Positions 5,220-28,784 of a stretch of 64,000 nucleotides of DNA are shown one piece after another. Numbering within the stretch: position 1 is the first letter of the stretch; every line of letters starts with the position of its first letter. The translations under genes and the position numbers were made by a program. Under the pieces are notes generated by a model, which was given only the letters and a program-made list of their open reading frames with translations, did not search any database and was not told the DNA's origin. This stretch comes from Guillardia theta CCMP2712 (lineage: Eukaryota > Protista > Cryptophyta), in the NCBI RefSeq assembly GCF_000315625.1, contig NW_005434664.1:229236-293235 (forward strand), given 5' to 3'.

Positions 5220-5796
5220 TAGGCGTTGAAGGGGTAGTACCGATGAAAGATCCGTATGATTGCTATTATGCGCAATGTGCCTTCCTGAGATGGAAAAATC
5301 TACGGGATCATCCTGTATTTTCAGAAATCAACACACTTCTAGCCGTGGGAAGCACTCCTGACAATTAGCCCCTCTTCTCGAAGATTTTCTTTTAGCTGCA
5401 AGCACTGAGATCGTCCTCTGACGCTGCTGCAGGCTTAACATGTTCACGGACTTGTGCTTCTTCTCAATCGACAAGCACTTGGGCATCAACTGTGAGCAAG
5501 ACTTGTTGTATCGTCTGTTTGCATGATGTGGTGTTGCGCAGATGCTGATGGGGGCATCAATCTTTCTGGACATAACGGCTATGTCCGGGATTGCACCAGT
5601 CTCGGGCCAGACGTTCCACCTGAAGCTGGTCTGTCCCCTTGTCATGCAGCTGAGCGCACTGAACGCGTTTGCAGGAGCAATGACCCTCTTGCCTCTCTCT
5701 GGCGTGAAGACAGCGAAAGGGAAGGGCAAGGCTGCCAAGGGCGCTAAGGCGGCAGCCAAGAGTGGGCCAACATCGTTCTACGCTGGGATGCAGTGA
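5220..5796 (+). CDS. 3' exons of a hypothetical protein (...DLCFFSIDKHLGINYADGG...AMTLLPLSGVKTAKGKGKAAKGAKAAAKSGPTSFYAGMQ*)
   Basis: GT-AG introns (~5492-5541 and ~5629-5674) splice into one continuous frame ending at TGA 5796. The start codon was not located. Confidence 0.4.
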
Positions 5797-6281
5797 AGGG
5801 CGAGCATGAAGAAGGGTGTGTTTGTTAGATAGCTTGAATATTGTTTGTATGAAGTGTTGTGTTGTGCGATGCGGGGTGCGCTGGATTAGACGATAAGTGG
5901 AAGCATCGTCGGACTCTGCTGCAAAACCAGTCGCACTGCATACTTGACATCCCATGTGGCGATGACATATCGGGATGCTCAATCCAGTCCGTGAGATGCA
6001 CCTGCCACACTCTTTCGACCTCTTGAGCACAAGCAACAGCAAGCAGGGAAACATATCCGTGCGACGATGTCAGCCCACCAGTTAAGATGTACGATCGACT
6101 TGATGTCACAAGTCCGATCTCAGGCCGTCAGGCATCGCACTCAACACGAAGGGACAAGGATTGTCGATCAATGGTGTATCGGTCACGGGCGAATGTCACA
6201 CTCAGTCAACGATGTCTTGCCTGTATTGTACTAGACTGAGTAAGCTCTCTCAGCATAAGACCGTCATGCGTTGATGCTGAG

Positions 6282-6375
6282 CTACCAAGCTTCCGCTGCA
6301 GTCGTCACATCTTGAAACGATCCTCCAGCCATACAGCACCACTTCCTCCTCATCGGCCTTCCTCGCTCCTCCCCG
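6282..6375 (-). pseudogene. 3' fragment of a family-A gene (11527-type C-terminus RRKWCCMAGGSFQDVTTAAEAW*)
   Basis: Nearly identical to rc of 11770-11865. The 5' part is deleted. Confidence 0.85.
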
Positions 6376-6482
6376 GGCTCAAGAAGGGACGACAGGGGAG
6401 GACGAGCGCGAGCTGGCGGATCAACACTATGTTTGCGGAGTCCTTCGAGGACAACGTGACGGCGGGGGCACTGGAGTGGTAA
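6375..6482 (+). pseudogene. 3' fragment of a family-B gene (10925-type)
   Basis: Encodes GLKKGRQGRTSASWRINTMFAESFE..VTAGALEW* and carries the same 3' flank as the 10925 copy. It is fused head-to-head with the A fragment at 6375. Confidence 0.85.
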
Positions 6483-6597
6483 GAGCGAGCGGGGCTGGGT
6501 AGGAGCTGAGGAGGCGATATCATCCGAGAATGGAGGATGCGTAGAATACTGTAAATAATAAACCCATCGTACAGAGAAAACTAGTGTTAAACTTTAA

Positions 6598-7190
6598 GGC
6601 AGTTCAGCGTAGTAATGCATAGTTTTTCATCAGGACGTTGACGAGCCTGACCTTTGCGGACGATGTCAGCAATTGTTTCAAGCATCACGTCGACAGTCGG
6701 AGTGGTAACTTTGTGCTGATTCAAGACGACTTGGTTCAAGTGACGCAGATCACAACAAAGCGATAACTGTTGGGATTAGTCGGGGAGCGTGGATCACTTG
6801 GACGTCGAGAAAACAAGACCCGAAAACCAAATTCGCTCTCGAGCATGGACGAGATTGTTGCTTGAAGTTCGCCCTCGAGGTGAAGGCCGGGCTTGAGATG
6901 TAAGCTGGAGATCAGTCGGCAGATCGTCGACCAAGACGTCAGCAAATCCCGCACACAGGTCCTTAGCAAGTTGAGCAGGAATGGTCGAGAGTGGCTGGGC
7001 TGGATCCGGGAGGCATGAGCGTCGGTAAGAGAAACTGTTGTCACTGACAGAACTGATTCCTTGAAGGGCACCTGGTGCTCCAGGCAGGCTGAGCGGCGGG
7101 GATCCACGGGCACCAGACGAGTCGACGAGCACCTCGAGTCGCTATCCACGAGTAGCGCAACTATCCACGATGGCCAGTGCGACAGTGTCA
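6598..7190 (-). mobile_element. Degenerate Ty3/gypsy LTR-retrotransposon pol remnant (protease to N-terminal RT)
   Basis: Frameshifted minus-strand peptides appear in gypsy order: AIVDSCAT (degenerate D(S/T)GAT protease motif), 'FADVLVDDLPTDL', 'EGELQATISSMLE..GFRVLF', then 'YRFV(V)DLRHLNQVV...TPTVDVMLETI...ITTL' (compare RMCVDYRxLN...PxIDxLL). Confidence 0.75.
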
Positions 7191-7508
7191 AGCCTCCTCG
7201 ACTCTCCTGATTGGCCTCGTATGATTTTTAACTTAACTTTGAGTAAACACTACCGAATGAAAGGAGTTGCTGATCCATCTGCTGATCCATCCTCGGATGC
7301 ACGCCTAGCTAGCAGTGGCGATCTGGCTAGTCAATGATTCTGATGAGTGATACTTTTAGTCAACTGTTTGACGGTATTCGGGGACTCACGAGTTTTACTA
7401 CATACAGGGTTGACCACCTCGAATCGTGACGTGACTCTGATACCAGCACCCTCTTCGTAAGATCTTTCAAGGCTAGACTGCACTCGAAGGGGGGGATTCG
7501 TCGAAACT

Positions 7509-7860
7509 GATCTCAACCCAGCCATCATGAGACGCTGAAAGGAAAGCACCTCTATCAAACGATGAGGTCTACCCGGCCAGTCGCCTCAAACGTGACACAC
7601 AGCCCCGTAACTTGGGATAGACTTTACTCCCTTCCACGAAACGTCACGTTCCGCCTTGGCCCGCAGATCTCAACCCAGCCATTACGAGCCAATGAGAGAA
7701 AAGCAGCTCTAACAAACGGTGAGGTCTACCCGGCCACACTCGCTCTCCCGACGTGCTGCTGCCTGGCCTTACAGGCGATCGACCGACTGGTATCGTGACT
7801 CTCGTAGCTGTTGGCCGAACCGCCGTGACATTAGGCCCCCGCATCTCCTCGTTTATAATA
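7509..7860 (+). promoter_or_regulatory. Shared upstream module of family-A genes: ~156-bp-period direct repeat plus TATA-like box
   Basis: 'gatctcaacccagccat...aggtctacccggcca' occurs at ~7509 and ~7665, and 'tttataata' at 7852-7860, about 100 nt before the ATG at 7963. The same module lies upstream of the 9579 and 14356 ATGs. Confidence 0.5.
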
Positions 7861-7962
7861 CCTTTTACATGCATGTTCCTCCGCCCCCTTGCATCGTAGA
7901 GCCTTCATATCAGACCCCTACGCTCCTGCTCCGACAGCAGCAGCCCCCCGCACCGCTGACCC

Positions 7963-8328
7963 ATGCCCTGCTCCGTCTCCCTCGTCGACCTCTCCCTCTC
8001 CCGCGCCCTCCCTCCCTCTCGTCCCCGCCCTTCCCTCAAGCTCTCTCCCGCTCAGCAGGCCTTCGTCGACGCCCACAGGCCCTCGGGCAGCCGGATGGAG
8101 GAGGAGCTGCCGGCGGGGGCAGTGAGAGTGAAGTCGGGAGGGGAGGGGGTGATGGCGGGAGTGATGGAGGCGAGGAGGCGAGGCGTGCGGGTATCAGCGG
8201 AGGACATCGGGGAGGAGCGAGGAGGGCCGATGGAAGGGAGGAGGCTTATGCTGGCAAGCAAGAAGAGCTTGGGGGCAAGGGGGTCGTTCAAGGATGTGAC
8301 GGAGGCAGCGGGGGCGTGGAGGACCTGA
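7963..8328 (+). CDS. Small intronless protein, family A, copy A1 (121 aa)
   Basis: MPCSVSLVDL...LSPAQQAFVDA...VRVKSGGEGVMAGVMEAR...SFKDVT. The frame is supported by third-position-only differences at conserved codons against family B. Confidence 0.75.
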   Translation: MPCSVSLVDLSLSRALPPSRPRPSLKLSPAQQAFVDAHRPSGSRMEEELPAGAVRVKSGGEGVMAGVMEARRRGVRVSAEDIGEERGGPMEGRRLMLASKKSLGARGSFKDVTEAAGAWRT

Positions 8329-8801
8329 AGCAGAATGAACTCAGGAGATTCAATAGGTGTATGTGTATAAGCGGGGAGTAAAATGGGTTTCTAGGAATAA
8401 ACGATGATATAGGAATTGTTTCCCGCATTATATTGTTTGATGGCTGCTGAAGTGAAAATGTTAATGTGGGTTTTCATGTCTAAAAGTACAGACTACCATT
8501 GCTGCGATTCTTTGATATGGACGGAAGTTTGCTTTGTCGCCACATTACATCACACTGAGTGAGTGGCTTTGCATTCTCGTATGTACTCATTGCACCATAT
8601 GAGAACATGATGCGTTTTCAGAGCACAAATCCTTCATCTGCACATTAGTCTGTCATTCGTGTTTCCACATGATGTTATGAGTTTGAAATCACTACGACAT
8701 GCCCTAATTGATATTTTGATGAACAATTGCTATGATCTTATTCTGGTCTAACCTCGTCTTGACGAGTCAACAAGCTCCCCACAATCGCATTCTGTGCATC
8801 T

Positions 8802-8984
8802 TTACATGCTTCGCAAGCCCGAGGGCTTGTTGGCGTCGACGAAGGCCTGCTGAGCGGGAGAGAGATCGAGACTCGCGCCGATTCGCCGGTAAGCTGCATG
8901 AAATTCTCCGCATTCTAAGAGCTCATCAGCTCCGTTTTCCTCGCTCCCCGACTCTTCAACTGCCACGCATGCTGCCACTGCCAT
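8802..8984 (-). pseudogene. Diverged or chimeric family-A-related ORF in the palindrome spacer
   Basis: The 60-aa ORF retains only 'LSPAQQAFVDANKPSG'. The rest is unrelated to family A. Confidence 0.5.
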
Positions 8985-9219
8985 CCTATTGCTACCTTGA
9001 GAGCGTTCTCTTCCTCATCTCTCCCGACCGAGGCTCCTCTCCCTCCAGCCCCTACCTGCTCCTGGCAAGCTGCTTTACAAACCAAGTACGGTTGATCGCT
9101 CTATGGTTGTTTATTCCTTCAAGCCCTATATACTCGCCCCCCATTCGCAAACACACAAATACACCTATTGTACATCCCGCTCGCCTTGTCTCCCTGACTC
9201 GCCTGGCATTTGCCTCGCC

Positions 9220-9579
9220 TCAGCTCATCCACGCCCCCGCTGCCTCCGTCACATCCTTGAACGACCCCCGTGATCGCTTCCCGCTCCCAACCATGAGCCT
9301 CCTCCCTTCCATCGGCCCTCCTCGCTCCTCCCCGATGTCCTCCGCTGATACCCGCACGCCTCGCCTCCTCGCCTCCATCACTCCCGCCATCACCCCCTCC
9401 CCTCCCGACTTCATTCTCACTGCCCCCGCCGGCAGCTCCTCCTCCATCCGGCTGCCCGAGGGCCTGTGGGCGTCGACGAAGGCCTGCTGAGCGGGAGAGA
9501 GCTTGAGGGAAGGGCGGGGACGAGAGGGAGGGAGGGCGCGGGAGAGGGAGAGGTCGACGAGGGAGACGGAGCAGGGCAT
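9220..9579 (-). CDS. Family A copy A2 (119 aa)
   Basis: Same N-terminal ~94 aa as A1 apart from one substitution. C-terminus is VGSGKRSRGSFKDVTEAAGAWMS. Confidence 0.75.
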   Translation of the reverse strand: MPCSVSLVDLSLSRALPPSRPRPSLKLSPAQQAFVDAHRPSGSRMEEELPAGAVRMKSGGEGVMAGVMEARRRGVRVSAEDIGEERGGPMEGRRLMVGSGKRSRGSFKDVTEAAGAWMS

Positions 9580-10329
9580 GGGTCAGCGGTGCGGGGGGCT
9601 GCTGCTGTCGGAGCAGGAGCGTAGGGGTCTGATATGAAGGCTCTGCGATGCAAGGGGGCGGAGGAACTATGCATGTAAAAGGTATTATAAACGAGGAGAT
9701 GCGGGGGCCTAATGTCACGGCGGTTCGGCCAACAGCTACGAGAGTCACGATACCAGTCGGTCGATCGCCTGTAAGGCCAGGCAGCAGCACGTCGGGAGAG
9801 CGAGTGTGGCCGGGTAGACCTCACCGTTTGGTAGCGTTGCTTTCCTTTAAGTGTCTCGTAATGGCTGGGTTGAGATCTGCAGGCCAAGGCGGAACGTGAC
9901 GTTTCGTGGAAGGGAGTAAAGTCTGTCCCAAGTTACGGGGCTGTGTGTCACGTTTGAGGCGACTGGCCGGGTAGACTTTACCGTTTGGTAGAGTTGCTTT
10001 CCTTTCAGTGTCTCATGATGGCTGGGTTGAGATCTGCAGGCCAAGGCGGAACGTGCCGTTTGAAGTTTCGACGAATCGAGTGCACTCTAGAAAGATCTTA
10101 CGAAGAGGTCGCTGGTATCAGAGTCACGGTTCGAGGTGGTCAACCCTGTATGTAGTAAAACTCGCAGTGAGTCCCCGACTCCAAGGGGTCGGCTCGCTGC
10201 TTGAGACCGTCAAACAGTTGACTAAAAGTATCACTCATCCGAGGCATTGGCTAGCCTGACTGGTGTCTTCCTTGACCAGAACAATCTTGCCGTCATCGAC
10301 TTGCTTGGGCTTATTCTGATGACAAAACA

Positions 10330-10820
10330 GATCAGCTGGGCCTTCATTCGTGAACGGATCAGCTACTTCTGCATTCGAGGATAGATCAGCTACTCCTTCA
10401 TGCGGTGTGACAGCCCCCGAAGCTTTTCGGGTTTCAGGCGACTAGAGCGAATTCTCAAGGCACCTCCGCTGGATCACACATAAAGGTGTAGAGTAGACAT
10501 GTCGAGCTTACTAGATCAGGGTGGCATACAACATGAGCAGAGAACAGACCCTCCTAGCTGAAGAGGCTGATCCTTATATAAGCTAAGGGAAGGACTAGGG
10601 GTACTGCTCCCTGACGCACGAGCACACTTGCCTCGTGCGAGCTCTTGCCTCTGGCAAGCTTCTGCTGCACCTCTTACCAAGAATGAGGAAACCACCCGTA
10701 CCAGCGAGTCTCGCCGTGCTAGGGCTCTGATACGGTGATAGATAAGCTACTCCTTCACTCGTGGATACATCAGGTACTTGCTCATTCGGTGATCGATCAG
10801 CTTCTTCTTCACTCGTGGAA
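10330..10820. repeat. Degenerate 27-bp tandem array (gatcagctactccttcattcg...) split by an insertion
   Basis: Units lie at ~10330, 10357 and 10384, then ~10741, 10768 and 10795. The minus strand reads as 9-aa repeats (STSEEEADR/SPNEQVPDV/STSEGVAYL...PHEGVADL). A remnant is present in the left arm at ~7255-7300. Confidence 0.7.
10408..10732. mobile_element. Probable solo LTR (325 bp) with 5-bp target-site duplication
   Basis: Flanked by CGGTG at 10403-10407 and 10733-10737. Termini are tgacagccc...gggctctgata (imperfect inverted, TG...TA). There is an internal 'ttatataa' at ~10573. It interrupts the 27-bp array. Confidence 0.7.
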
Positions 10821-10924
10821 AGTTGGGCTGCTCTGTACGATGGGTTTATTATTTACAGTATTCTACGCATCCTCCATTCTCGGATGATATCGCCTCCTCA
10901 GCTCCTACCCAGCCCCGCTCGCTC

Positions 10925-11272
10925 TTACCACTCCAGTGCCCCCGCCGTCACGTCCTCGAAGGACTCCGCAAACACAGTGTTGATCTGCCAGCTCGCGCTC
11001 GTCCTCCCCTGTCGTCCCTCCTTGAGCCCTGCTGCTACCTTCCTCGCCTCCATCACTCCCCGCATCAGCTCCTTCCCCTCCGACTCCACCCTCACAGCTC
11101 TCCCTGCTGGCTGCCTCGCCTCCTCCGCACACGGCGATGAGGGCGCGTGAGCATCGAGGTATGCCTGCTGGGAGGGGGAGAGCCTGAAGCAGGGGCGGGA
11201 GGGGCGACAGGGAGGGGAGGGGGGAGAGGGAGGGAGGTCGACGATGGTGATGGCGAGGACGAAGGGAGGCAT
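10925..11272 (-). CDS. Small intronless protein, family B, copy B1 (115 aa)
   Basis: MPPFVLAITIVDLPP...LSPSQQAYLDA...VRVESEGKELMRGVMEAR...SFEDVT, colinear with family A. Confidence 0.75.
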   Translation of the reverse strand: MPPFVLAITIVDLPPSPPSPPCRPSRPCFRLSPSQQAYLDAHAPSSPCAEEARQPAGRAVRVESEGKELMRGVMEARKVAAGLKEGRQGRTSASWQINTVFAESFEDVTAGALEW

Positions 11273-11526
11273 GCCTGCTGCTGAGGGAGCTGTGGGTGCG
11301 GAGGAGAGGCTGGAAGCTGCGGATCAAGGGAGTGGTGGGGCGGGGCAAGCCTCCGTAAGGGGTTTGAAAGACGCGACTGCTCTTGCGAGGGTCAAGAGAA
11401 GATAGAAGCCCGCCTCAGACCTTGAAGAGATCTAGAAGTTTCTTTAAAGGGTCGGAGACGTGTGGACGTAAGCAAGGCATCTTGTAACAAGGTTCTCTTT
11501 CCACCGCATCGCGAGGACGCAGACCC

Positions 11527-11865
11527 ATGCCCTGCTCCGTCTCCCTCGTCGACCTCTCCCTCTCCCGCGCCCTCCCTCCCTCTCGTCCCCGCCCTTCCCT
11601 CAAGCTCTCTCCCGCTCAGCAGGCCTTCGTCGACGCCCACAGGCCCTCGGGCAGCCGGATGGAGGAGGAGCTGCCGGCGGGGGCAGTGAGAGTGAAGTCG
11701 GGAGGGGAGGGGGTGATGGCGGGAGTGATGGAGGCGAGGAGGCGAGGCGTGCGGGTATCAGCGGAGGACATCAGGGAGGAGCGAGGAGGGCCGATGAGGA
11801 GGAAGTGGTGCTGTATGGCTGGAGGATCGTTTCAAGATGTGACGACTGCAGCGGAAGCTTGGTAG
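11527..11865 (+). CDS. Family A copy A3 (112 aa), divergent from B1 across 254 bp
   Basis: N-terminal ~90 aa are nearly identical to A1. It has a distinct C-terminus (RRKWCCMAGGSFQDVTTAAEAW) and a distinct upstream sequence. Confidence 0.75.
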   Translation: MPCSVSLVDLSLSRALPPSRPRPSLKLSPAQQAFVDAHRPSGSRMEEELPAGAVRVKSGGEGVMAGVMEARRRGVRVSAEDIREERGGPMRRKWCCMAGGSFQDVTTAAEAW

Positions 11866-12350
11866 CTCAGCATCAACGCATGACGGTCTTATGCTGAGAG
11901 AGCTTACTCAGTCTAGTACAATACAGGCAAGACATCGTGGACTGAGTGTGACATTCGCTCGTGACCGATACACCATTGATCGACAATCCTTGTCCCTTAT
12001 GACGTGTTGAGTGCGATGCCTGATGACCTGAGATCGGACTTGTGACATCAAGTCGATCGCACATCTTAACTGGTGGGCTGACATCGTCGCACGGATATGT
12101 TTCCCTGCTTGCTGTTGCTTGTGCTCAAGAGGTCGAAAGAGTGTGGCAGGTGCATCTCACGGACTGGATTGAACATCCCGATATGTCATCGCCACATGGG
12201 ATGTCAAGTATGCAGTGCGACTGGTTTTGCAGCAGAGTCCGACGATTCCCCTTATCGTCTCCTCCTGCGCACCCGCATCGCACAACACAACACTTCATAC
12301 AAACAATATTCAAGCTATCTAACAAACACACCCTTCTTCATGCTCGCCCT

Positions 12351-12637
12351 TCACTGCATCCCAGCGTAGAACGATGTTGGCCCACTCTTGGCTGCCGCCT
12401 TAGCGCCCTTGGCAGCCTTGCCCTTCCCTTTCGCTGTCTTCACGCCAGAAAGAGGCAAGAGGGTCATTGCTCCTGCAAACGCGTTCAGTGCGCTCAGCTG
12501 CATGACAAGGGGACAGACCAGCTTCAGGTGGAACGTCTGGCCCGAGACTGGTGCAATCCCGGACATAGCCGTTATGTCCAGAAAGATTGATGCCCCCGTC
12601 AGCATCTGCGCGACACCACATCATGCAAACAGACGAT
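12351..12637 (-). pseudogene. Duplicated last exons of the gene ending at 5796
   Basis: Inverted copy that begins inside an intron of the source gene, with no upstream exons. Confidence 0.55.
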
Positions 12638-12814
12638 GAACGCTGCTTGGAGTACAAGGATTTGAAGGTTAACGAGATGAGTGGCAGGAACTAAAAGTTT
12701 ATTTGACAGTGTAGCATAGTCTTGAAGTGAGTTAACAAGCACCTACTACACACATACATTGTGTATATCCAAAATTCCTTCTCGCAGACTCTTTCTCCCG
12801 TAAAACTCCAACCT

Positions 12815-13180
12815 TCAGGTCCTCCACGCCCCCGCTGCCTCCGCCACATCCTTGAACGACCCCCTTGCCCCCAAGCTCTTCTTGCTTGCCAGCATAAGCC
12901 TCCTCCCTTCCATCGGCCCTCCTCGCTCCTCCCCGATGTCTTCCGCTGATACCCGCACGCCTCGCCTCCTCGCCTCCATCACTCCCGCCATCACCCCCTC
13001 CCCTCCCGACTTCACTCTCACTGCCCCCGCCGGCAGCTCCTCCTCCATCCGGCTGCCCGAGGGCCTGTGGGCGTCGACGAAGGCCTGCTGAGCGGGAGAG
13101 AGCTTGAGGGAAGGGCGGGGACGAGAGGGAGGGAGGGCGCGGGAGAGGGAGAGGTCGACGAGGGAGACGGAGCAGGGCAT
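12815..13180 (-). CDS. Family A copy A4 (121 aa)
   Basis: Identical to A1 except DVAE for DVTE. Confidence 0.75.
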   Translation of the reverse strand: MPCSVSLVDLSLSRALPPSRPRPSLKLSPAQQAFVDAHRPSGSRMEEELPAGAVRVKSGGEGVMAGVMEARRRGVRVSAEDIGEERGGPMEGRRLMLASKKSLGARGSFKDVAEAAGAWRT

Positions 13181-13996
13181 GGGTCAGCGGTGCGGGCGGC
13201 TGCAGCTGTCGGAGCAGGAGCGTCGAGGTCTGATATGAAGGCAGAGCCCTCGAGATGCGGAGGTCTGCACCGAGATGCGTGGGGGTCAAAACCTCTTACA
13301 GGGCTGTCACGATACCGAGATAAGCCTGCTTCAAACGCTTTGACTGTGAGCGTCGATGACCGCTGCATCTGATCCCCTGGTCTCGGAGGCCACAGCCGAT
13401 CAAGGAGTGCTCGATCACAGACTCTACAATCAGTCTCAACTCGGTGTCACCAACCTACAGCACGGTGCGGATCTTTTACTCAAAGCGGATAGTTTAGTGA
13501 CACCCGGGTCACAAATCACTCAGTGTCTGTCGCCGAGCTGCCTGACGGGCCCCGGGGGCCCTTCAGTTTCGCTTTCCTAGCCGGAGCCAGTCACTGTCTC
13601 GACGAGCACACGCGGCAGCATACAAGAAGCTCAGCTACCCTTGACTCCCTCCCTTATCCATTGACATGTGCAGTCAGTCAGCTGCCACCGCACAATGATG
13701 CTTACGACTGTCACTGTATTGCCTGGCTGCGAGTCTCAAGAGCAGTCTCTGCTTCCACTCTCATGCTGCAGGAGCGAAGCTCCTCGTCCTCTACTGCCGA
13801 TCTAGTCCAGTGCCGTCTCCAACCAACCCAACGGCGATAACGCTTCGAGATTCATAGAGATGCTGATTGTTGCTCTTTGTGAATTGTTTATTCCTGCAAG
13901 CCCTATGTACTCTTAGCCTATTCGCAAACACACAAATACACCTATTGTACATCCCGCTCGCCTTGTCTCCCTGACTCGCCTGGCATTTGCCTCGCC

Positions 13997-14356
13997 TCAG
14001 CTCATCCACGCCCCCGCTGCCTCCGTCACATCCTTGAACGACCCCCGTGATCGCTTCCCGCTCCCAACCATGAGCCTCCTCCCTTCCATCGGCCTTCCTC
14101 GCTCCTCCCCGATGTCCTCCGCTGATACCCGCACGCCTCGCCTCCTCGCCTCCATCACTCCCGCCATCACCCCCTCCCCTCCCGACTTCACTCTCACTGC
14201 CCCCGCCGGCAGCTCCTCCTCCATCCGCCTGCCCGAGGGCCTGTGGGCGTCGACGAAGGCCTGCTGAGCGGGAGAGAGCTTGAGGGAAGGGCGGGGACGA
14301 GAGGGAGGGAGGGCGCGGGAGAGGGAGAGGTCGACGAGGGAGACGGAGCAGGGCAT
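13997..14356 (-). CDS. Family A copy A5 (119 aa)
   Basis: A2-type C-terminus with three substitutions relative to A2. Confidence 0.75.
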   Translation of the reverse strand: MPCSVSLVDLSLSRALPPSRPRPSLKLSPAQQAFVDAHRPSGRRMEEELPAGAVRVKSGGEGVMAGVMEARRRGVRVSAEDIGEERGRPMEGRRLMVGSGKRSRGSFKDVTEAAGAWMS

Positions 14357-15306
14357 GGGTCAGCGGTGCGGGGGGCTGCTGCTGTCGGAGCAGGAGCGTC
14401 GGGGTCTGATATAAAGGCTCTGCGATGCAAGGGGGCGGAGGAGATATGCATGTAAAAGGTATTATAAACGAGGAGATGCGGGGGCCTAATGTCACGGCGG
14501 TTCGGCCAACAGCTACGAGAGTCACGATACCAGTCGGTCGATCGCCTGTAAGGCCAGGCAGCAGCACGTCGGGAGAGCGAGTGTGGCCGGGTAGACCTCA
14601 CCGTTTGTTAGAGCTGCTTTTCTCTCAGTGTCTCGTAATGGCTGGGTTGAGATCTGCGGGCCAAGGCGGAACGTGACGTTTCGTGGAAGGGAGTAAAGTC
14701 TATCCCAAGTTACGGGGCTGTGTGTCACGTTTGAGGCGACTGGCCGGGTAGACTTCACCGTTTGGTAGAGGTGCATTCCTTCAGGCCAAGGCAGAACGTG
14801 ACGTTTGAAGTTTCGACGAATCGAGCGGCAGTCTAGAAAGATCTTACGAAGAGGGTGCTGATATTCCCAGTGTCACGCGTCAGTTTCACGTTCCGCAGAT
14901 CGGCCGGACTTCGGCGGGCCCGTCACCTTAGTCACTCACAGTACGGTCGGACACTGCCGACACCTCAGTGTGACGGAGCCTCGGCGGGAGCTGCGGAGCC
15001 TGTCACCGGGCACCCCGGTTGTGACTGCCAGGGCCACCTTCTTGGTCAGAGTCAGAGTGCGACTGTTCATTTTTCCGAATCATTAGGTAGAAACCTGCCA
15101 CGGTACTACCGGGTATGTTAAGTTACATCCGGAGCCTGGCACCTGTGTCACTGGCGAAGCTGCGGCGCCTACCGGTCACGGGCAGCCTGTTCGCCTTCCG
15201 CCTCCAACCACTGAGGATGCCCCAACTTAGAGTCAATCTTTATGTGTCATACTCCTTGACAACCTGATGGGTGTACTCTCTTTGCTAACTTCAGACCACT
15301 CACCTC

Positions 15307-17373
15307 TCATGGGCCCTCAGACGCTGCCGTTTCGCTTTTGATCTCTGGCAACGGATGAGCTACTCCTCCCTGTTTACTGTTCCCTCGCCCCTGTCTCCTC
15401 CAGTTTCCTTCTGCCCCTGCCTCTCCTCGAGCTGACGATCCTCGACTGCCATCCAGGGGAAGCTGGTAGGCCTCTCTCAGAGTCATCACAGAAGCTCCTT
15501 GCCGGAAGAGGTTGTCTCCATGGCCCGGGCGGTTCACTATCGCCATGGCATCGGCTTCCGAGAGCTCCTTGAGAAGGAGAGCATAGCTGGTGTCGTCCAG
15601 CCGACGGAGAGAAACCTTGCTGGGGGCAAACCAGCCACAAACATTCTTGATCGACGATTCGGAGGGGAGACCGATGACAACCAGGGTGGTCATGTCCTCA
15701 TCCAGGAGTCGGTCTTGCGCCTGATCCACACAGACTGATTTGAAGTTTCTTGGCACGTGCAGAACATTCCGGGCCTTGTCTCCATCTGATAAGACGTCCC
15801 TGAACATGTCCCCAAAGATACAGCCTGTTGCAAACGCATCCCAGCCGCTTTCGTGCAGCTTCTGGGAGGAATAATGTTTGAAGTCACTATGAAGGGACAC
15901 CCTACAGGCGGTTGAGGCATTCCGAGATCTCCTGTAAAGGTCCAAGAGGTTGGTGAGTTGGGCATCTTCTTGTTTGAAAGCCACGTGAGCAAGGTACTTG
16001 GTATCGTACACTTGGGGGAAGCTCCTGTGAACGATGCTTTTGAACTCCATCAGAGTGTTGGGCAGACGGCATTCAAAATGAGAGATCAGAAACATCAGGT
16101 CGTACAACCCGTTGTGTACCACCATGGGCTTCTTGCTTGATGACAGCACATTGAAAATGTGCCGAAACCCAAGACGAGATTGTAGGATCTGATGCGCTTT
16201 CTCTGTCGTACGCTTCCGCCAGCTCTCATCTCCCCGCGAGCAAACCAGCCGCATGACAAGAGGGTTGCAGGGCTCTTTCCTCGTCATCACAACCAGCTTC
16301 GGGTACTTCATCGCAACCTGCTGCTGCAGTGCAAGCCTGATGAAGGAGTTCGCACTGGGAAACATGTATTCTTCATTCCCCGCCTGCTCGCCTACACCAT
16401 TCATCCACGCATCCAGTCCATCCATGAGCCTGTTCAACAGAACAAGATCTCCCTCTCTTGTGATTGCAACAGGTCTGGACTGTCTGAACTCGCTCTTCTC
16501 CACTCCGAACTGTCTCATGACGTCATAGCGGACGTAGACCTCTCCAAGGGCATCGGTGTAAGGGATCCCATCGTAGAACCATCGGTTGAAGTCCAGCTGG
16601 CACTGCCCTATGTGAAACTCGTGGATGGTGTTGACGTCCAATGTTACCCGAGGGCTCGAGCTTGACCTGGAGGAGGGGAACACGAAGAAAGTGTAGGGTC
16701 TAGCGATCAACCCACCATTCTTCTCATCCTTGTGAAAGATGCACAGCCCTACAGATATGATGCTGTTCGAGGAAGCGACCTCTCGCATCTTCATGTACCG
16801 ATCTTCGAGGTCCTCCATCCATTGGAATTCGTCGTAGGTCTGCAACGAAGTCATCTCAAGGTCCAGAGTGTAAAATTCACAGGATGGCAGCATGCTCTCG
16901 ATCTGACTAGCAACTTGCGGGAACATCGAGCGATCGATGAAGGACTTCTTGGATTTTGCAGGTCTCCAAAGGCCGAAAGTTGATGACAATTCAGGGATAG
17001 ACTTGAGATAAGTCAAAGGGTTAACCCTCTTCGAGATGGACTTGCAGGCTTCGATCACAAGGCTTCCCACTCGTCTCAGCATCGAACTCTTTGGCATGGA
17101 GCGTCTTTCATGAACTTGATCCAACCTCCACTTGCTCGCCTCGTAGGTCGGCTTGCTGATCTTGTCAACTCCTCTGAGTTCGGTGGAGCATCGACTATGA
17201 TGGGTCCTATCCATGTCGACGGATTTCAGACCAGCATTGGAGTTGATTCTCACTGATAACGTTGGTGCCATCAACAGTAAACACATCAAGAACAAGCTGA
17301 GGGATGCCTTTGCTGATCGGCTGCAAGTCAGCATGCCTGCGAGGCGAAAGCTGCTTGCTAGCAAGGTTCCCAT
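15307..17373 (-). CDS. PARN: Poly(A)-specific ribonuclease (PARN-like, CAF1/DEDDh family) with a long N-terminal extension
   Basis: 688-aa uninterrupted ORF with motifs TLDLEMT (D,E), DFNRWFYDGIPY, R3H-like NSFIRLALQQ, VVHNGLYDL, YDTKYLA, LHESGWDAFATG, and an RRM-like C-terminal region. Confidence 0.9.
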   Translation of the reverse strand: MGTLLASSFRLAGMLTCSRSAKASLSLFLMCLLLMAPTLSVRINSNAGLKSVDMDRTHHSRCSTELRGVDKISKPTYEASKWRLDQVHERRSMPKSSMLRRVGSLVIEACKSISKRVNPLTYLKSIPELSSTFGLWRPAKSKKSFIDRSMFPQVASQIESMLPSCEFYTLDLEMTSLQTYDEFQWMEDLEDRYMKMREVASSNSIISVGLCIFHKDEKNGGLIARPYTFFVFPSSRSSSSPRVTLDVNTIHEFHIGQCQLDFNRWFYDGIPYTDALGEVYVRYDVMRQFGVEKSEFRQSRPVAITREGDLVLLNRLMDGLDAWMNGVGEQAGNEEYMFPSANSFIRLALQQQVAMKYPKLVVMTRKEPCNPLVMRLVCSRGDESWRKRTTEKAHQILQSRLGFRHIFNVLSSSKKPMVVHNGLYDLMFLISHFECRLPNTLMEFKSIVHRSFPQVYDTKYLAHVAFKQEDAQLTNLLDLYRRSRNASTACRVSLHSDFKHYSSQKLHESGWDAFATGCIFGDMFRDVLSDGDKARNVLHVPRNFKSVCVDQAQDRLLDEDMTTLVVIGLPSESSIKNVCGWFAPSKVSLRRLDDTSYALLLKELSEADAMAIVNRPGHGDNLFRQGASVMTLREAYQLPLDGSRGSSARGEAGAEGNWRRQGRGNSKQGGVAHPLPEIKSETAASEGP

Positions 17374-17629
17374 GGATCGCTCAGAGAGGCTATCATTCTT
17401 CCTCTAGTCTCCTGTATAGTTCCATCTACTCTTATGTCTTCTGTGCTGGCAGCAACTCCTTCTTTCCTCTCCCCCTCCCCTCATTATTGCCCATGTCCGT
17501 CGACATGGTGAACTTGGGACGAGGCCATTTGGAATCCGTCCCTTCCTCAGTTTCATTCATGAGGACAACTTGGTTTTAAAACTCTTCCTGTCATATTCAA
17601 AATTCTAATTGGGAATTTTGACAAGACTC

Positions 17630-18400
17630 AACAGTGACTCCGGGCCCGAGCGGTGACTCTCTCGTCAGCGACCGTACCCGGTGACCCGCCGGGCCGCCGC
17701 ACGCACTGCCCCACTGATGCAACCGGTTGAACCGGCCCGGGGATTTTTAATCAATCACGGCAGCCCGCGGCCGCCGGTAAACTTTGAAAGGCTCAGTGAG
17801 TCACTGTCCGACGGACCGTACTCACGGTCGCCGGCCCGCCCGCGCCGGCGCCGCGGCGCGGCCCGCCGGGGCCGGGGCCACTGGCGGCGGCAAGGGCCGG
17901 AAGTTTGAACTTGTTGAGTAACTGAGTCGACGAGCGGCGATCGGACCCGAGGCACCCCGTGACCGTGCCGTTCACTCACTCGGACCGTCGCCGGACGTTG
18001 CCAAGTTGAACCGTTGAACCGTGCCGGCCCGGCCCGGGCCGCGGCGCGTCCGACGGACCGTGCCAATACTACGGGCCGGGCGGCGCCGCGAGCCCGGCTC
18101 CGGCCCCCGGGAGCCCGGTGATCGGACAGCGGCCTCCGATGATGCCGCCGCCGCGGCGCGCAGTGCGCCGCGGGCCCGGGGCCCGCCCGGCCGGGACCCC
18201 AGGAGCGGCGCCCGGCCTGGTGATCGGACACTGCGGCGGCCCAGCCCGGTAAAACGGGCCCGTCAGGCTTGCCAAGAAGTTGCCGCGCCGGCGGCGAATA
18301 CTGAAATTGACCGGCACTCGAAGGTTGCGAGGCTGTATCGGAGCCTCGGAGGCAACCGTTGCAACCGTTGGCTGTAAGCCCCCCGCTGGTTTGTCGGGGA
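17630..18400. promoter_or_regulatory. Very GC/CpG-rich non-coding island
   Basis: Dense ggcccggg, ccgcgg, gtgact and aaccgtt words, lying between the divergent PARN and B2 genes. Similar islands occur at ~14880-15180, 19770-20030 and 49630-50900. Confidence 0.4.
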
Positions 18401-18596
18401 GCAGTCACGAGACGGCAGGGTCGAGATGGTCTAGAAGGTTCTTACGAAGGGTCAGACGGCCTTCTACCCCGAAGAAGATTCAAAATTAAAAACAAATATC
18501 CGGGGAGATACCTGGGAGATACCCTCGACTTCTTCATCTCGCCCTCCTCTGCAGCCTGCTCTGCAGCCTCGTGCTACTGGTATCATCCGCCACAGC

Positions 18597-18944
18597 ATGA
18601 CACGCGTCCTCGCCATCACCATCGTCGACCTCCCTCCCTCTCCCCCCTCCCCTCCCCGTCGCCCCTCCCGCCCCTGCTTCAGACTCTCCCCCTCCCAGCA
18701 GGCATACCTCGATGCTCAGGTGCCCACGTCGCCGTGTGCGGAGGAGGCGAGGCAGCCTGCAGGGAGAGGTGTGAGGGTGGAGTCGGAGGGGAAGGAGCTG
18801 ATGCAGGGAGTGATGGAGGCGAGGAAGGCAGCAGCAGGGCTCAAGAAGGGACGACAGGAGGGAACGGGCGCGAGCTGGCGGAGCCAAGTGTTTGCGGAGT
18901 CCTTCGAGGACGTGACGGCGGGGGCACTGGAGTTTCATGCATGA
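18597..18944 (+). CDS. Family B copy B2 (115 aa)
   Basis: MTRVLAITIVDLPP...VFAESFEDVTAGALEFHA*, a paralog of B1. Confidence 0.75.
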   Translation: MTRVLAITIVDLPPSPPSPPRRPSRPCFRLSPSQQAYLDAQVPTSPCAEEARQPAGRGVRVESEGKELMQGVMEARKAAAGLKKGRQEGTGASWRSQVFAESFEDVTAGALEFHA

Positions 18945-19346
18945 GCAAGAAGGGGAGTGTCGGAAGACAGTTGCAGCCTTGACGCGAATTGAGGATGTAC
19001 GATGTAGGATAGATGTAAGTTAAGCGAGGGAACGATTGAATAAATTCATTTATACAATCATACAATTCTGATAACCTTTCAATGTGCATGTTTAAACCTC
19101 TACAGTTGTGAAAAACAGCCTTGAAATGTGCATGAATACATGATGTCAATATCAAATTCCTTCAAATCAGTTGTTCGAATACCTTTTTTCGCTTGGAATT
19201 GTGAAATTATTTTGGCTGTTGTGAAACACAAATCAAAAGGTTCGCCCGAGTTGAAATACACTCATATCACTATGTTTATTCCCATGCTTGAGCTTACATC
19301 TATCGTACATCGTACCTTCCCCACCTCTATTTAGCTTGATCAAAGC

Positions 19347-19693
19347 TCATGCATGAAACTCCAGTGCCCCCGCCGTCACGTCCTCGAAGGACTCCGCAAA
19401 CACAGTGATCCGCCAGCTCGCGCTCGTCCTCCCCTGTCTCCCCTTCTTGAGCCCTGCTGCTGCCTTCCTCGCCTCCATCACTCCCCGCATCAGCTCCTTC
19501 CCCTCCGACTCCACCCTCACACCTCTCCCTGCCGGCTGCCTCGCCTCCTCCGCACACGGCGATAGGGCGCGTGAGCATCGAGGTATGCCTGCTGGGAGGG
19601 GGAGAGTCTGAAGCAGGGGCGGGAGGGGCGACGAAGAGGGGAGGGGGGAGAGGGAGGGAGGTCGACGATGGTGATGGCGAGGACGCGTGTCAT
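19347..19693 (-). pseudogene. Family B copy B3 with a 1-bp frameshift; inverted partner of B2
   Basis: 347 nt versus 348 nt for B1 and B2. It reads 'gcgccctatcg' where B1 reads 'gcgccctcatcg'. The N- and C-terminal halves fall in different ORF-track frames. Confidence 0.8.

Positions 19694-23638: not shown

Positions 23639-28784
<5,146 letters not shown>

What the first reader, a model, noticed from the sequence alone, without database searches (positions are those of the whole stretch)
6282..19693. Unrecognised family of ~115-aa intronless genes expanded to about 11 copies and fragments in one locus
Seen: five intact family-A ORFs (7963+, 9220-, 11527+, 12815-, 13997-), two intact family-B ORFs (10925-, 18597+), one frameshifted B, two 3' fragments and one diverged fragment. 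A and B share colinear motifs VDL, (K/R)LSPxQQA(F/Y)xDA, VRVxSxG..MxGVMEAR and SFxDVT. Conserved codons differ at third positions (tct/tcc, gcc/gca, gac/gat, gcc/gct), which argues for purifying selection on this frame. I recognise no domain. Inference: a lineage-specific family of short Pro/Ser-rich, motif-bearing proteins. Being intronless and TATA-containing among intron-dense neighbours fits rapid-response genes under dosage selection.
Basis: partly seen in the sequence, partly recalled or inferred. Interest (0 to 1): 0.85.

Follow-up and report, generated by a model that had tools for sequence, protein, structure and literature searches.

The report
Cryptophyte-only family of small disordered proteins
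The eleven copies and fragments in this locus belong to a real, transcribed family of about 80 intronless genes for small, basic, mostly disordered proteins found only in the cryptophyte algae Guillardia and Hanusia; their function is unknown, and their only multi-domain relative is a cyclic-nucleotide-binding protein.

Summary
The window is Guillardia theta CCMP2712 scaffold C10. It carries five intact A genes, two intact B genes, one frameshifted B and three fragments, at the stated coordinates.

The family is not confined to this locus. A family profile finds 84 matches on 32 scaffolds, mostly in small tandem or inverted clusters.

Evidence that these are real genes:
- Stranded RNA reads cover A and B in sense, without splice joints.
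- dN/dS between clusters is 0.37-0.50, with bootstrap intervals below 1. Shifted frames give about 0.9-2.
- GC3 exceeds GC1 and GC2.
- At least five or six paralogues have well-supported orthologues in the Hanusia phi transcriptome.

Inside the window the selection signal is weak: A-B 0.70 (n.s.) and B1-B2 1.27.

An exhaustive profile search of 1.84 billion proteins found the family only in Guillardia, Hanusia and three environmental contigs. Pfam, PDB and the ESM Atlas give nothing.

AlphaFold predicts two short helices in an otherwise disordered chain.

One distant member, GUITHDRAFT_153906, carries all four family motifs directly in front of a cNMP-binding domain, and Hanusia conserves this arrangement. 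My working model, which is inferred, is that the small proteins are CNB-less, microProtein-like binding modules.

"Rapid-response, dosage-selected" is untested. TATA boxes and intron-dense neighbours are only partly true.

The parts
7963..8328 (+). A1, intact 121-codon gene with tail type 'LMLASKK...AWRT'
   Evidence: ORF. 100% match. Sense RNA from A-type copies, and RNA contigs carrying this tail.
9220..9579 (-). A2, intact 119-codon gene with tail type 'LMVGSGK...AWMS'; convergent partner of A1
   Evidence: inverted repeat I2, 98%. An RNA contig of run X2 runs on into this tail.
11527..11865 (+). A3, intact 112-codon gene with a third tail type ('RRKWCCMAGG...'); head-to-head with B1, 254 bp apart
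   Evidence: Stranded reads and a 172-nt RNA contig cover its specific tail. The orthologous environmental copy L032 is 95.5% identical with no indels.
12815..13180 (-). A4, intact 121-codon gene; inverted copy of A1 (99%)
   Evidence: I1, 430 nt, 99%.
13997..14356 (-). A5, intact 119-codon gene; direct copy of A2
   Evidence: D1/D2, 97-99%.
10925..11272 (-). B1, intact 115-codon gene
   Evidence: Sense-strand RNA reads over 10812-11167. Hanusia orthologue P0010 at 63% identity.
18597..18944 (+). B2, intact 115-codon gene; convergent partner of B3
   Evidence: I10, I13, I14.
19347..19693 (-). B3, a B copy broken by a 1-nt deletion after about codon 43 (pseudogene or sequencing error)
   Evidence: spacing 8425 versus 8424. 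The alignment shows the gap. The two halves lie in two frames.
6282..6373 (-). 3' fragment of an A3-type gene (last 30 codons plus stop)
   Evidence: I12, 99% to 11774-11998. Translation.
6441..6482 (+). 3' fragment of a B-type gene (last about 13 codons)
   Evidence: I15, 100% to 10831-10953. Translation.
8808..8885 (-). Diverged fragment that keeps only motif 2 ('LDLSPAQQAFVDANKPSG')
   Evidence: E 0.0012. Translation.
7509..7962 (+). 5' flank/promoter block shared by A1, A2 (9580-10034, -) and A5 (14357-14781, -). It contains a TATA-like box at 7854-7861 and a 98-nt repeat.
   Evidence: I5, I6, D4. Found nowhere else in the genome. TATA position.

Best explanation
Shown:
- The locus is a recently duplicated and rearranged array, mostly convergent inverted pairs.
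- It belongs to a genuine, transcribed, intronless, protein-coding family restricted to the Guillardia/Hanusia cryptophytes.
- The genome holds about 80 copies in small clusters. Several paralogues predate the split of the two genera.
- The products are 65-140 residues, mostly basic (pI about 9-11 in 16 of the 19 members measured; B1 6.6), and predicted to be largely disordered.
- Four conserved modules define the family. Module 1 is an N-terminal alternating hydrophobic stretch (SxSLVDLS). Module 2 is a basic run followed by F/L-K/R-L-S-P-x-Q-Q-A-Y/F-x-D, a capped helix. Module 3 is V-R-V-x-S-x-G-x-E-L-M-x-x-V-x-E-A-R, a second helix. Module 4 is a C-terminal S-F/W-E/K-D-V-T.

Inferred (about 0.3 on its own): all four modules also form the whole N-terminal region of one conserved cyclic-nucleotide-binding protein, GUITHDRAFT_153906. 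The region ends exactly where the cNMP-binding domain begins. The free-standing proteins therefore most likely act as CNB-less, microProtein-like binding modules. On this model they fold on contact with the same partner(s) as that N-terminal region and compete with, or substitute for, the cNMP-regulated protein. Local duplication and exchange of C-terminal tails would adjust dose and specificity.
For: Organism and annotation: GUITHDRAFT names; 87.1 Mb, 669 contigs.

Family size: 30, 56 and 84 matches with increasingly diverse queries.

Restriction: an exhaustive HMM search of 1.84e9 representatives gave 16 hits. All are Guillardia, Hanusia phi or environmental contigs, except one weak phage tail-fibre repeat.

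Coding:
- dN/dS is 0.37-0.50 between clusters with bootstrap CI below 1. Frames +1 and +2 of the same alignments give 0.9-2.2.
- GC3 is 0.72-0.88, above GC1 and GC2, in all but two low-GC members.
- An ATG sits directly before module 1 in every member.
- The environmental orthologue has a CDS 95.5% identical without indels, against flanks of 86-92.5% with indels.

Transcription: raw stranded RNA reads cover A at depth up to 86 with antisense 0.57 or less. They cover B1 at depth up to 9.9 with antisense 0.35 or less. The read orientation was calibrated on a neighbouring spliced gene. Spliced-RNA contig sets carry all three A tails. No joints fall in the CDS. Homologues are present in the Hanusia and MMETSP transcriptomes.

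Age: the tree has five strongly supported Guillardia-Hanusia pairs and one at 94/85.

Structure: AF2 gives pLDDT 63.5 and pTM 0.22. Only H29-37 and H61-72 are confident.

Fusion: P0026 has PF00027 at E 7e-9. The family profile matches it at E 3.8e-23. Its Hanusia orthologue is 63% identical and keeps the modules. The alignment places modules 1-4 in residues 20-137.
Against: The mechanism rests on a single domain fusion; no interaction was shown. The homodimer prediction returned 'no answer'.

The direction of evolution is unknown. The CNB protein may simply have acquired a common module.

Selection inside this locus is weak: A-B 0.70 (CI 0.39-1.16) and B1-B2 1.27. Some copies here may be drifting.

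There is no protein-level evidence. The clade containing A (A, C30, C86) has no Hanusia sequence.
Confidence: 0.5

Rival explanations
1. Small basic nucleic-acid-binding proteins, chromatin-associated or ribbon-helix-helix-like. The strand-plus-helix modules would pair in a dimer and contact DNA or RNA. The CNB fusion would then be a cNMP-controlled nucleic-acid binder, analogous in logic to bacterial CRP.
For: pI is about 9-11 or above in 16 of 19 members measured. A basic run sits directly before module 2. The alternating hydrophobic stretches followed by helices resemble beta-alpha units of ribbon-helix-helix proteins; this resemblance is from memory, not tested. A CNB-plus-output-domain architecture is compatible.
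Against: No Pfam DNA-binding family matches any of 28 members, even at E up to 5. AF2 does not pack the helices. The linker between the helices varies from about 10 to 45 residues. B1 is near neutral (pI 6.6).
Confidence: 0.15
2. Generic protective or scaffold disordered proteins (LEA-like stress proteins, condensate clients) whose copy number serves bulk dosage. This is closest to the first reader's 'rapid-response, dosage' idea.
For: Predicted disorder. Many near-identical copies, three of them sharing one promoter block. Intronless short mRNAs.
Against: Conservation is concentrated in four short, position-specific modules kept across about 20% identity and across genera. That pattern points to specific binding rather than bulk physico-chemical action. 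No expression-condition data were available.
Confidence: 0.15
3. An ORF carried by a transposable element or an integrated polinton-like virus, amplified by transposition.
For: Multi-copy with frequent inverted arrangements. G. theta is reported to hold many polinton-like virus insertions (abstract of PMC12220804, listed).
Against: Near-identical copies occur only within a cluster, while copies on other scaffolds are 20-60% identical. The A flank is unique to this locus. The ORFs of 170 aa or more that were scanned up to 32 kb show no transposase, integrase, capsid or ATPase domains. PHROGs gives nothing. Orthologous paralogues are stable since the Guillardia-Hanusia split.
Confidence: 0.04
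4. Not protein-coding. The ORFs would be accidents of GC-rich duplicated DNA, or the convergent pairs would serve as hairpin/dsRNA (siRNA) sources.
For: All three frames are open over long stretches in this GC-rich DNA. Convergent inverted pairs recur. dN/dS within the locus is not significantly below 1.
Against: The dN/dS signal is specific to the proposed frame, and GC3 behaves as in coding sequence. Motifs are conserved at 20% identity and across genera. RNA is almost exclusively sense.
Confidence: 0.04
5. Rubisco/pyrenoid-associated helix proteins related to the CsLinker sticker motif.
For: Module 2 of two distant members hits Pfam PF24429 (CSLinker motif) at E 0.0028 and 0.013. CsLinker is a disordered protein whose roughly 10-residue helices bind RbcL (PMC11570498).
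Against: Scores of 15.5-17.6 bits lie far below the 27-bit cut-off. Only 2 of 28 members hit. The motif occurs once per protein, so there is no multivalency. No N-terminal hydrophobic signal peptide is evident for the cryptophyte plastid route (by eye only). The PDB profile search did not list any CsLinker entry.
Confidence: 0.03

Closest known systems
microProteins (e.g. Id proteins, LITTLE ZIPPER, miP1a/b); a concept recalled from general knowledge
   Same: Small proteins of about 140 aa or less. They are homologous to just one interaction region of a larger multi-domain protein and lack that protein's functional domain. Here modules 1-4 equal residues 20-137 of GUITHDRAFT_153906, without its cNMP-binding domain.
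   Different: No binding or inhibition has been shown. There are about 80 small copies against one long protein, so the direction of descent is open. The shared region is an undescribed, largely disordered module, not a known dimerisation domain.
PKA regulatory-subunit N-terminal linker and the heat-stable inhibitor PKI (analogy from general knowledge)
   Same: A disordered, basic, helix-bearing segment placed N-terminal to a cNMP-binding domain. Alongside it exist free-standing small disordered proteins that carry a comparable segment.
   Different: No sequence similarity was found; no RIIa or any other PKA-related Pfam match appears. There is one CNB domain rather than two, and about 45 residues separate module 4 from the Pfam CNB match. 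The kinase link is pure conjecture.
Pyrenoid linker sticker motifs (CsLinker, Pfam PF24429)
   Same: A disordered protein with a short, roughly 10-residue helix as the conserved element. Weak sub-threshold profile hits fall on module 2.
   Different: The hits are below the gathering score. There is one motif per protein instead of six repeats, and no evident plastid-targeting signal (for CsLinker features).
Taxonomically restricted (orphan) multigene families in tandem or palindromic arrays
   Same: Genus-level restriction, local birth-and-death, near-identical neighbours consistent with gene conversion, pseudogenes and fragments.
   Different: This family is demonstrably older than the Guillardia-Hanusia split and is under purifying selection, so it is not a very recent de novo family.

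Membership tests
Any Pfam-A family | Score at or above the family's gathering threshold | tested here: not met
   A, B and 26 other members have no family above cut-off. The best hit is CSLinker at 17.6 bits against 27.
CSLinker motif (PF24429) / pyrenoid linkers | Several tandem repeats of the helix motif per protein (multivalency) | tested here: not met
   Module 2 occurs once per protein in all aligned members. CsLinker has six repeats.
CSLinker motif (PF24429) / pyrenoid linkers | Plastid targeting and Rubisco binding | not testable with these tools
   No targeting predictor or binding assay was available. The N-termini lack an obvious hydrophobic signal peptide, judged by eye.
Cyclic-nucleotide-binding proteins (PF00027) | Presence of the cNMP-binding beta-barrel domain | tested here: not met
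   A and B have none. Only the distant member P0026 has it (E 7e-9).
microProtein (functional class) | Small size, and homology to one region of a larger multi-domain protein whose other domains are missing | tested here: met
   Members are 66-138 aa. The family profile hits the P0026 N-terminal region at E 3.8e-23, and the alignment is colinear through module 4.
microProtein (functional class) | Physical interaction with, and interference with, the larger relative or its partners | not testable with these tools
   The only complex job, an A homodimer, returned 'no answer'. This is not evidence either way.
Transposable element / integrated virus ORF | Hallmark genes or terminal repeats alongside, and dispersed near-identical copies | tested here: not met
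   No such Pfam domains in the ORFs of 170 aa or more that were scanned across the first 32 kb. The A flank is unique to the locus. Copies on different scaffolds are 20-60% identical.
Ribbon-helix-helix DNA-binding proteins | Beta-alpha-alpha fold forming an intertwined dimer; match to RHH profiles | tested here: inconclusive
   No RHH Pfam hit at E up to 5. The AF2 monomer shows helices but no packing. The dimer test gave no answer.

The most novel reading that the evidence does not exclude
The four-module region would be a previously undescribed output or partner-binding domain of a cyclic-nucleotide sensor in cryptophytes. The roughly 80 free-standing genes would be a massively amplified set of CNB-less competitors or decoys. 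Such a microProtein system, on a scale not described in protists, would tune a cAMP/cGMP pathway and would be diversified by exchange of C-terminal tails within palindromic arrays.
Probability: 0.2. Interest if true: 0.65.

Novelty: new variant of a known kind. Interest (0 to 1): 0.45.

Why it matters
Cryptophyte nuclear genomes are full of unannotated 'hypothetical' genes. This work turns one set of them into a defined family with a profile, about 80 members, orthologues in a second genus, evidence of transcription and of selection, and a single informative domain fusion.

If the link to the cNMP-binding protein reflects function, it offers an entry point into cyclic-nucleotide signalling in an algal group where almost nothing is known. 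It would also be an example of large-scale amplification of a truncated regulatory module.

The locus is also a clear case of birth-and-death evolution in convergent inverted gene pairs. It shows three alternative C-terminal tails, and at least two of them (the A2/A5-type and the A3-type) are older than the split from an environmental relative.

If the link is not functional, this remains an ordinary taxonomically restricted family of modest interest.

Tried and rejected
- Homodimer prediction for A residues 1-82: verdict 'no answer', score 0.00. This is not evidence for or against binding.
- ESM Atlas look-alikes for A and for the N-terminal 140 residues of P0026: no usable hit. Structural rows all have TM 0.32 or less.
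- PDB profile search: best E 0.13, unrelated proteins.
- PHROGs: nothing below E 0.05.
- Pfam on 28 members: only sub-threshold CSLinker hits in two members. I treat these as probably chance after reading PMC11570498.
- P0019, a 1815-aa tail-fibre-like repeat protein (E 2.8e-4): its repeat 'LHLT(S/P)xQNTF(L/I)D' mimics module 2 by chance.
- Long open frames upstream of several members (up to 360 codons): low-complexity or N-gap read-through, not extra domains.
- Other fusions: only the C61 cNMP fusion is real.
- Literature search for six GUITHDRAFT identifiers: no paper mentions them.
- AF2 of P0026 with a shallow alignment: the CNB domain is poorly modelled (pLDDT 59), so nothing can be said about docking of the N-terminal region.
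- Fold search was not run, because both models are of low confidence (pTM 0.22 and 0.27).
- Candidate short linear motifs recalled from memory were not testable here and are offered only as leads: SUMO-interaction-like 'VDLS', Atg8-interaction-like 'WEDV', MAPK-docking-like basic-x-F-K-L, and kinase pseudosubstrate-like 'RRRCF'.
- Earlier scan notes searched by words and by sequence: nothing.
Full report
**Observation**

- Five A genes: 7963-8328+, 9220-9579-, 11527-11865+, 12815-13180-, 13997-14356-.
- Two B genes: 10925-11272-, 18597-18944+.
- One B copy at 19347-19693(-), whose two halves lie in different frames.

The repeat finder shows that the A copies are 96-99% identical. In A1, A2 and A5 the identity extends over about 450 nt of 5' flank. 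Most copies sit as convergent inverted pairs: A1/A2, A3/A4 and B2/B3. The B3 frameshift is a 1-nt deletion. The direct-repeat spacing drops from 8425 to 8424, and the alignment shows the gap.

The three fragments are also real:
- 6282-6373(-) encodes the last 30 codons of an A3-type gene.
- About 6441-6482(+) encodes the end of a B-type gene.
- 8808-8885(-) keeps only motif 2.

The count of 'about 11 copies and fragments' is therefore correct.

**Whose genome, and how big is the family**

The window is G000:C10:229236-293235 of an 87.1-Mb, 669-contig assembly. Database hits name it Guillardia theta CCMP2712. Several family members are deposited there as 'hypothetical protein GUITHDRAFT_147366/110595/110596/107747/115595/153397'.

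The family is not a single-locus expansion. The genome was searched in six frames with three queries:
- A1 alone gives 30 matches.
- A 13-member profile gives 56.
- A 28-member profile gives 84, on 32 scaffolds.

Matches typically fall in groups of 2-7 and are often inverted pairs (C30, C49, C21, C13). One copy abuts an N-gap (C665), so the count is a lower bound.

Every member has an ATG directly before the first conserved module, and an open frame of 65-140 codons.

**Is it coding?**

Nei-Gojobori dN/dS was computed in the proposed frame.
- Between clusters it is 0.37-0.50: A-C30, A-C86, B-C151, C46-C151 and within C151. Bootstrap 95% intervals lie wholly below 1.
- The same alignments read in frames +1 and +2 give 0.9-2.2.
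- Inside the window the signal is weak: A-B 0.70 (0.39-1.16) and B1-B2 1.27 (n.s.).

GC3 (0.72-0.88) exceeds GC1 and GC2 in all but two low-GC members.

An environmental metagenome contig (L032) is orthologous to this locus. Its CDS is 95.5% identical to A3 with no indel. Its flanks are 86-92.5% identical and contain indels.

**Is it expressed?**

A raw stranded RNA-seq run (X17) was sampled at about 6% of its reads.
- It covers the A gene body at depth up to 86, with antisense depth 0.57 or less.
- It covers the 3' half of B1 at depth up to 9.9, with opposite-strand depth 0.35 or less.
- Intergenic bins have no coverage.

The library's orientation was calibrated on the neighbouring gene at 12236-12680. 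Its 46-nt intron reads GT..AG on the minus strand, and its reads have the first mate on the minus strand.

Contig sets X1-X3 contain that spliced form, so they are RNA. They also contain 395-525-nt contigs colinear with the A CDS, running on into either the A1/A4 tail or the A2/A5 tail. One further contig covers the A3-specific tail.

No splice joint falls inside any CDS. The genes are therefore transcribed, in sense, and intronless.

Independent support comes from family members in the Hanusia phi (EukProt EP00960) and MMETSP transcriptomes.

**Phylogenetic range and age**

An exhaustive profile search of 1.84 billion cluster representatives gave only 16 hits. They are G. theta proteins, Hanusia phi transcripts, three metagenome-derived proteins and one spurious tail-fibre repeat protein. 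A second word-seeded search with the broader profile added only further Hanusia and environmental sequences.

A maximum-likelihood tree was built.
- Five Guillardia-Hanusia pairs have starred support: B with P0010, C18a with P0018, C49c with P0017, C212b with P0024, and the two cNMP fusion proteins.
- One further pair, C46c/e with P0011, has 94/85 support.
- Copies within one scaffold cluster together.

The family therefore had several members before the two genera split, and it has since expanded by local duplication. The clade containing A (A, C30, C86) has no Hanusia sequence in hand.

**What the protein looks like**

Alignments A2-A4 define four colinear modules:
1. An alternating hydrophobic stretch just after the start (SxSLVDLS).
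2. A basic run followed by F/L-K/R-L-(S/N/T)-P-x-Q-Q-A-Y/F-x-D. The S/N/T-P-x-Q pattern looks like a helix N-cap; this is inference.
3. V-R-V-x-S-x-G-x-E-L/C-M/L-x-x-V/I-x-E-A-R.
4. Near the C-terminus, S-F/W/L-E/K-D-V-T.

Linkers vary from about 10 to 45 residues and are rich in Ser and Pro.

AlphaFold2 with the 24-sequence alignment gives mean pLDDT 63.5 and pTM 0.22. Only two confident elements appear, helices 29-37 (module 2) and 61-72 (module 3). The rest is modelled as coil.

Of 19 members measured, 16 have pI about 9 or higher. B1 is the exception at 6.6.

Pfam, PHROGs, PDB sequence profiles and the ESM Atlas recognise nothing.

**The one informative relative**

A distant match on scaffold C61 lies in a 323-codon intronless ORF, L051:3709-4677(-). 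This ORF is exactly GUITHDRAFT_153906 (P0026). The match has E 3e-5 with the first profile and 3.8e-23 with the broader one, whose alignment already includes this N-terminal region.

P0026 carries a Pfam cNMP-binding domain at residues 171-266 (E 7e-9). Its Hanusia orthologue P0027 is 63% identical and conserves modules 1-3. The module-4 position is more diverged there.

In alignment A4 all four modules fall in residues 20-137 of P0026. They end where the helices that lead into the cNMP-binding domain begin.

AF2 of P0026 shows three helices in that region, at 18-35, 49-63 and 82-97. The cNMP-binding domain is poorly modelled with so shallow an alignment.

No other domain fusion was found among the long open frames I checked.

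**How it most likely works**

Shown: a conserved, expressed family of small, largely disordered proteins, whose conserved parts are short helices and strand-like motifs. One family member places this region in front of a cyclic-nucleotide sensor domain.

Inferred: the region is a partner-binding (output) module that folds on binding. The free-standing proteins are CNB-less versions that engage the same partner(s). They would act as competitors or constitutive substitutes, as microProteins do.

I give this about 0.3. I give the statement that this is a genuine protein-coding family about 0.9.

Rivals:
- A small basic nucleic-acid binder (0.15).
- A generic protective or dosage-type disordered protein (0.15).
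- A transposon or viral ORF (0.04).
- Non-coding DNA or a dsRNA source (0.04).
- A Rubisco-linker-like helix (0.03).

The transposon idea fails on three counts. The A flank is unique to this locus. No hallmark domains were found in the large ORFs scanned across the first 32 kb of the window, which instead encode CAF1, XPA-like and OTU/PHD proteins. Identity is high only within clusters.

The dsRNA idea is not supported by the almost purely sense RNA.

The CSLinker hits are far below threshold: 15.5-17.6 bits against a 27-bit cut-off, in 2 of 28 members. The proteins also lack the repeats that make a linker.

Correct: a lineage-specific family, no known domain, intronless, and coding in this frame.

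To correct:
- The family is genome-wide and shared with Hanusia.
- Some members are already deposited as hypothetical proteins.
- A TATA-like box at -109/-110 is present only upstream of A1, A2 and A5.
- The immediate neighbours are not intron-dense in what I could see.
- 'Rapid response under dosage selection' remains untested.

**Novelty and score**

This is an undescribed protein family (no Pfam model, no literature) of a familiar kind: a taxonomically restricted, tandemly amplified small-protein family. The conserved fusion to a cNMP-binding domain and the scale of amplification are the unusual features. Interest is moderate (0.45). It would rise if the cNMP link proved functional.

Noticed in passing
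L051:3709-4677 (-) = G000:C61, GUITHDRAFT_153906: A 323-aa intronless protein. All four family modules lie in residues 20-137, directly followed by a cNMP-binding domain (PF00027). The Hanusia phi orthologue is 63% identical.
   Followed up: yes
window 12236-12680 (-) and inverted copy 5510-6148 (+): A duplicated, transcribed gene of unknown function with a 46-nt GT-AG intron (about 12473-12518). RNA contigs come mainly from the 5510 copy and extend upstream of it. In the contig sets its depth is 1.4 to 6 times that of the A genes. The spliced frame gives only a 75-codon ORF with no recognisable domain.
   Followed up: partly
window 15307-17373 (-): A single uninterrupted 688-codon ORF with a CAF1-family ribonuclease domain (PARN-like; E 4.5e-67). 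It sits between the A and B parts of the array, and is an intronless neighbour in an intron-rich genome.
   Followed up: partly
window 7639-7736, 9807-9904, 9964-10061, 14584-14681: A 98-nt element (88-100% identical) repeated in the shared 5' flank of A1, A2 and A5, and duplicated 157 nt apart upstream of A2. It may be a promoter module. The whole flank occurs nowhere else in the genome.
   Followed up: partly
L031, L032, L033 (metagenome contigs: ENA PRJEB17505 samples, JGI 3300013131): Environmental contigs carry family genes. L032 and L033 hold loci 82-95% identical to this array, flanks included, so a close relative of G. theta is present in those samples. L031 holds a variant of the C151 subfamily. 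L032 combines an A1-like upstream region with an A3-type tail, which points to exchange between copies. The L033 copy is frameshifted near codon 18.
   Followed up: partly
window 5510-6576 versus 10831-12637: A large inverted duplication (four colinear arms, 98-100% identical) in which the stretch 10954-11773, holding most of B1 and A3, is missing from the left copy. This is what left the two 3' gene fragments.
   Followed up: partly
L020 (G000:C665:1-1082): A family copy on a 1-kb contig runs straight into a block of Ns. Family arrays coincide with assembly gaps, so the copy number is probably underestimated.
   Followed up: no
window 23802-24677 (+) and 29111-31921 (-): Downstream neighbours are ordinary cellular genes: an ORF with a weak XPA C-terminal match (E 7e-5) and a 937-codon ORF with OTU protease and PHD finger domains.
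   Followed up: no
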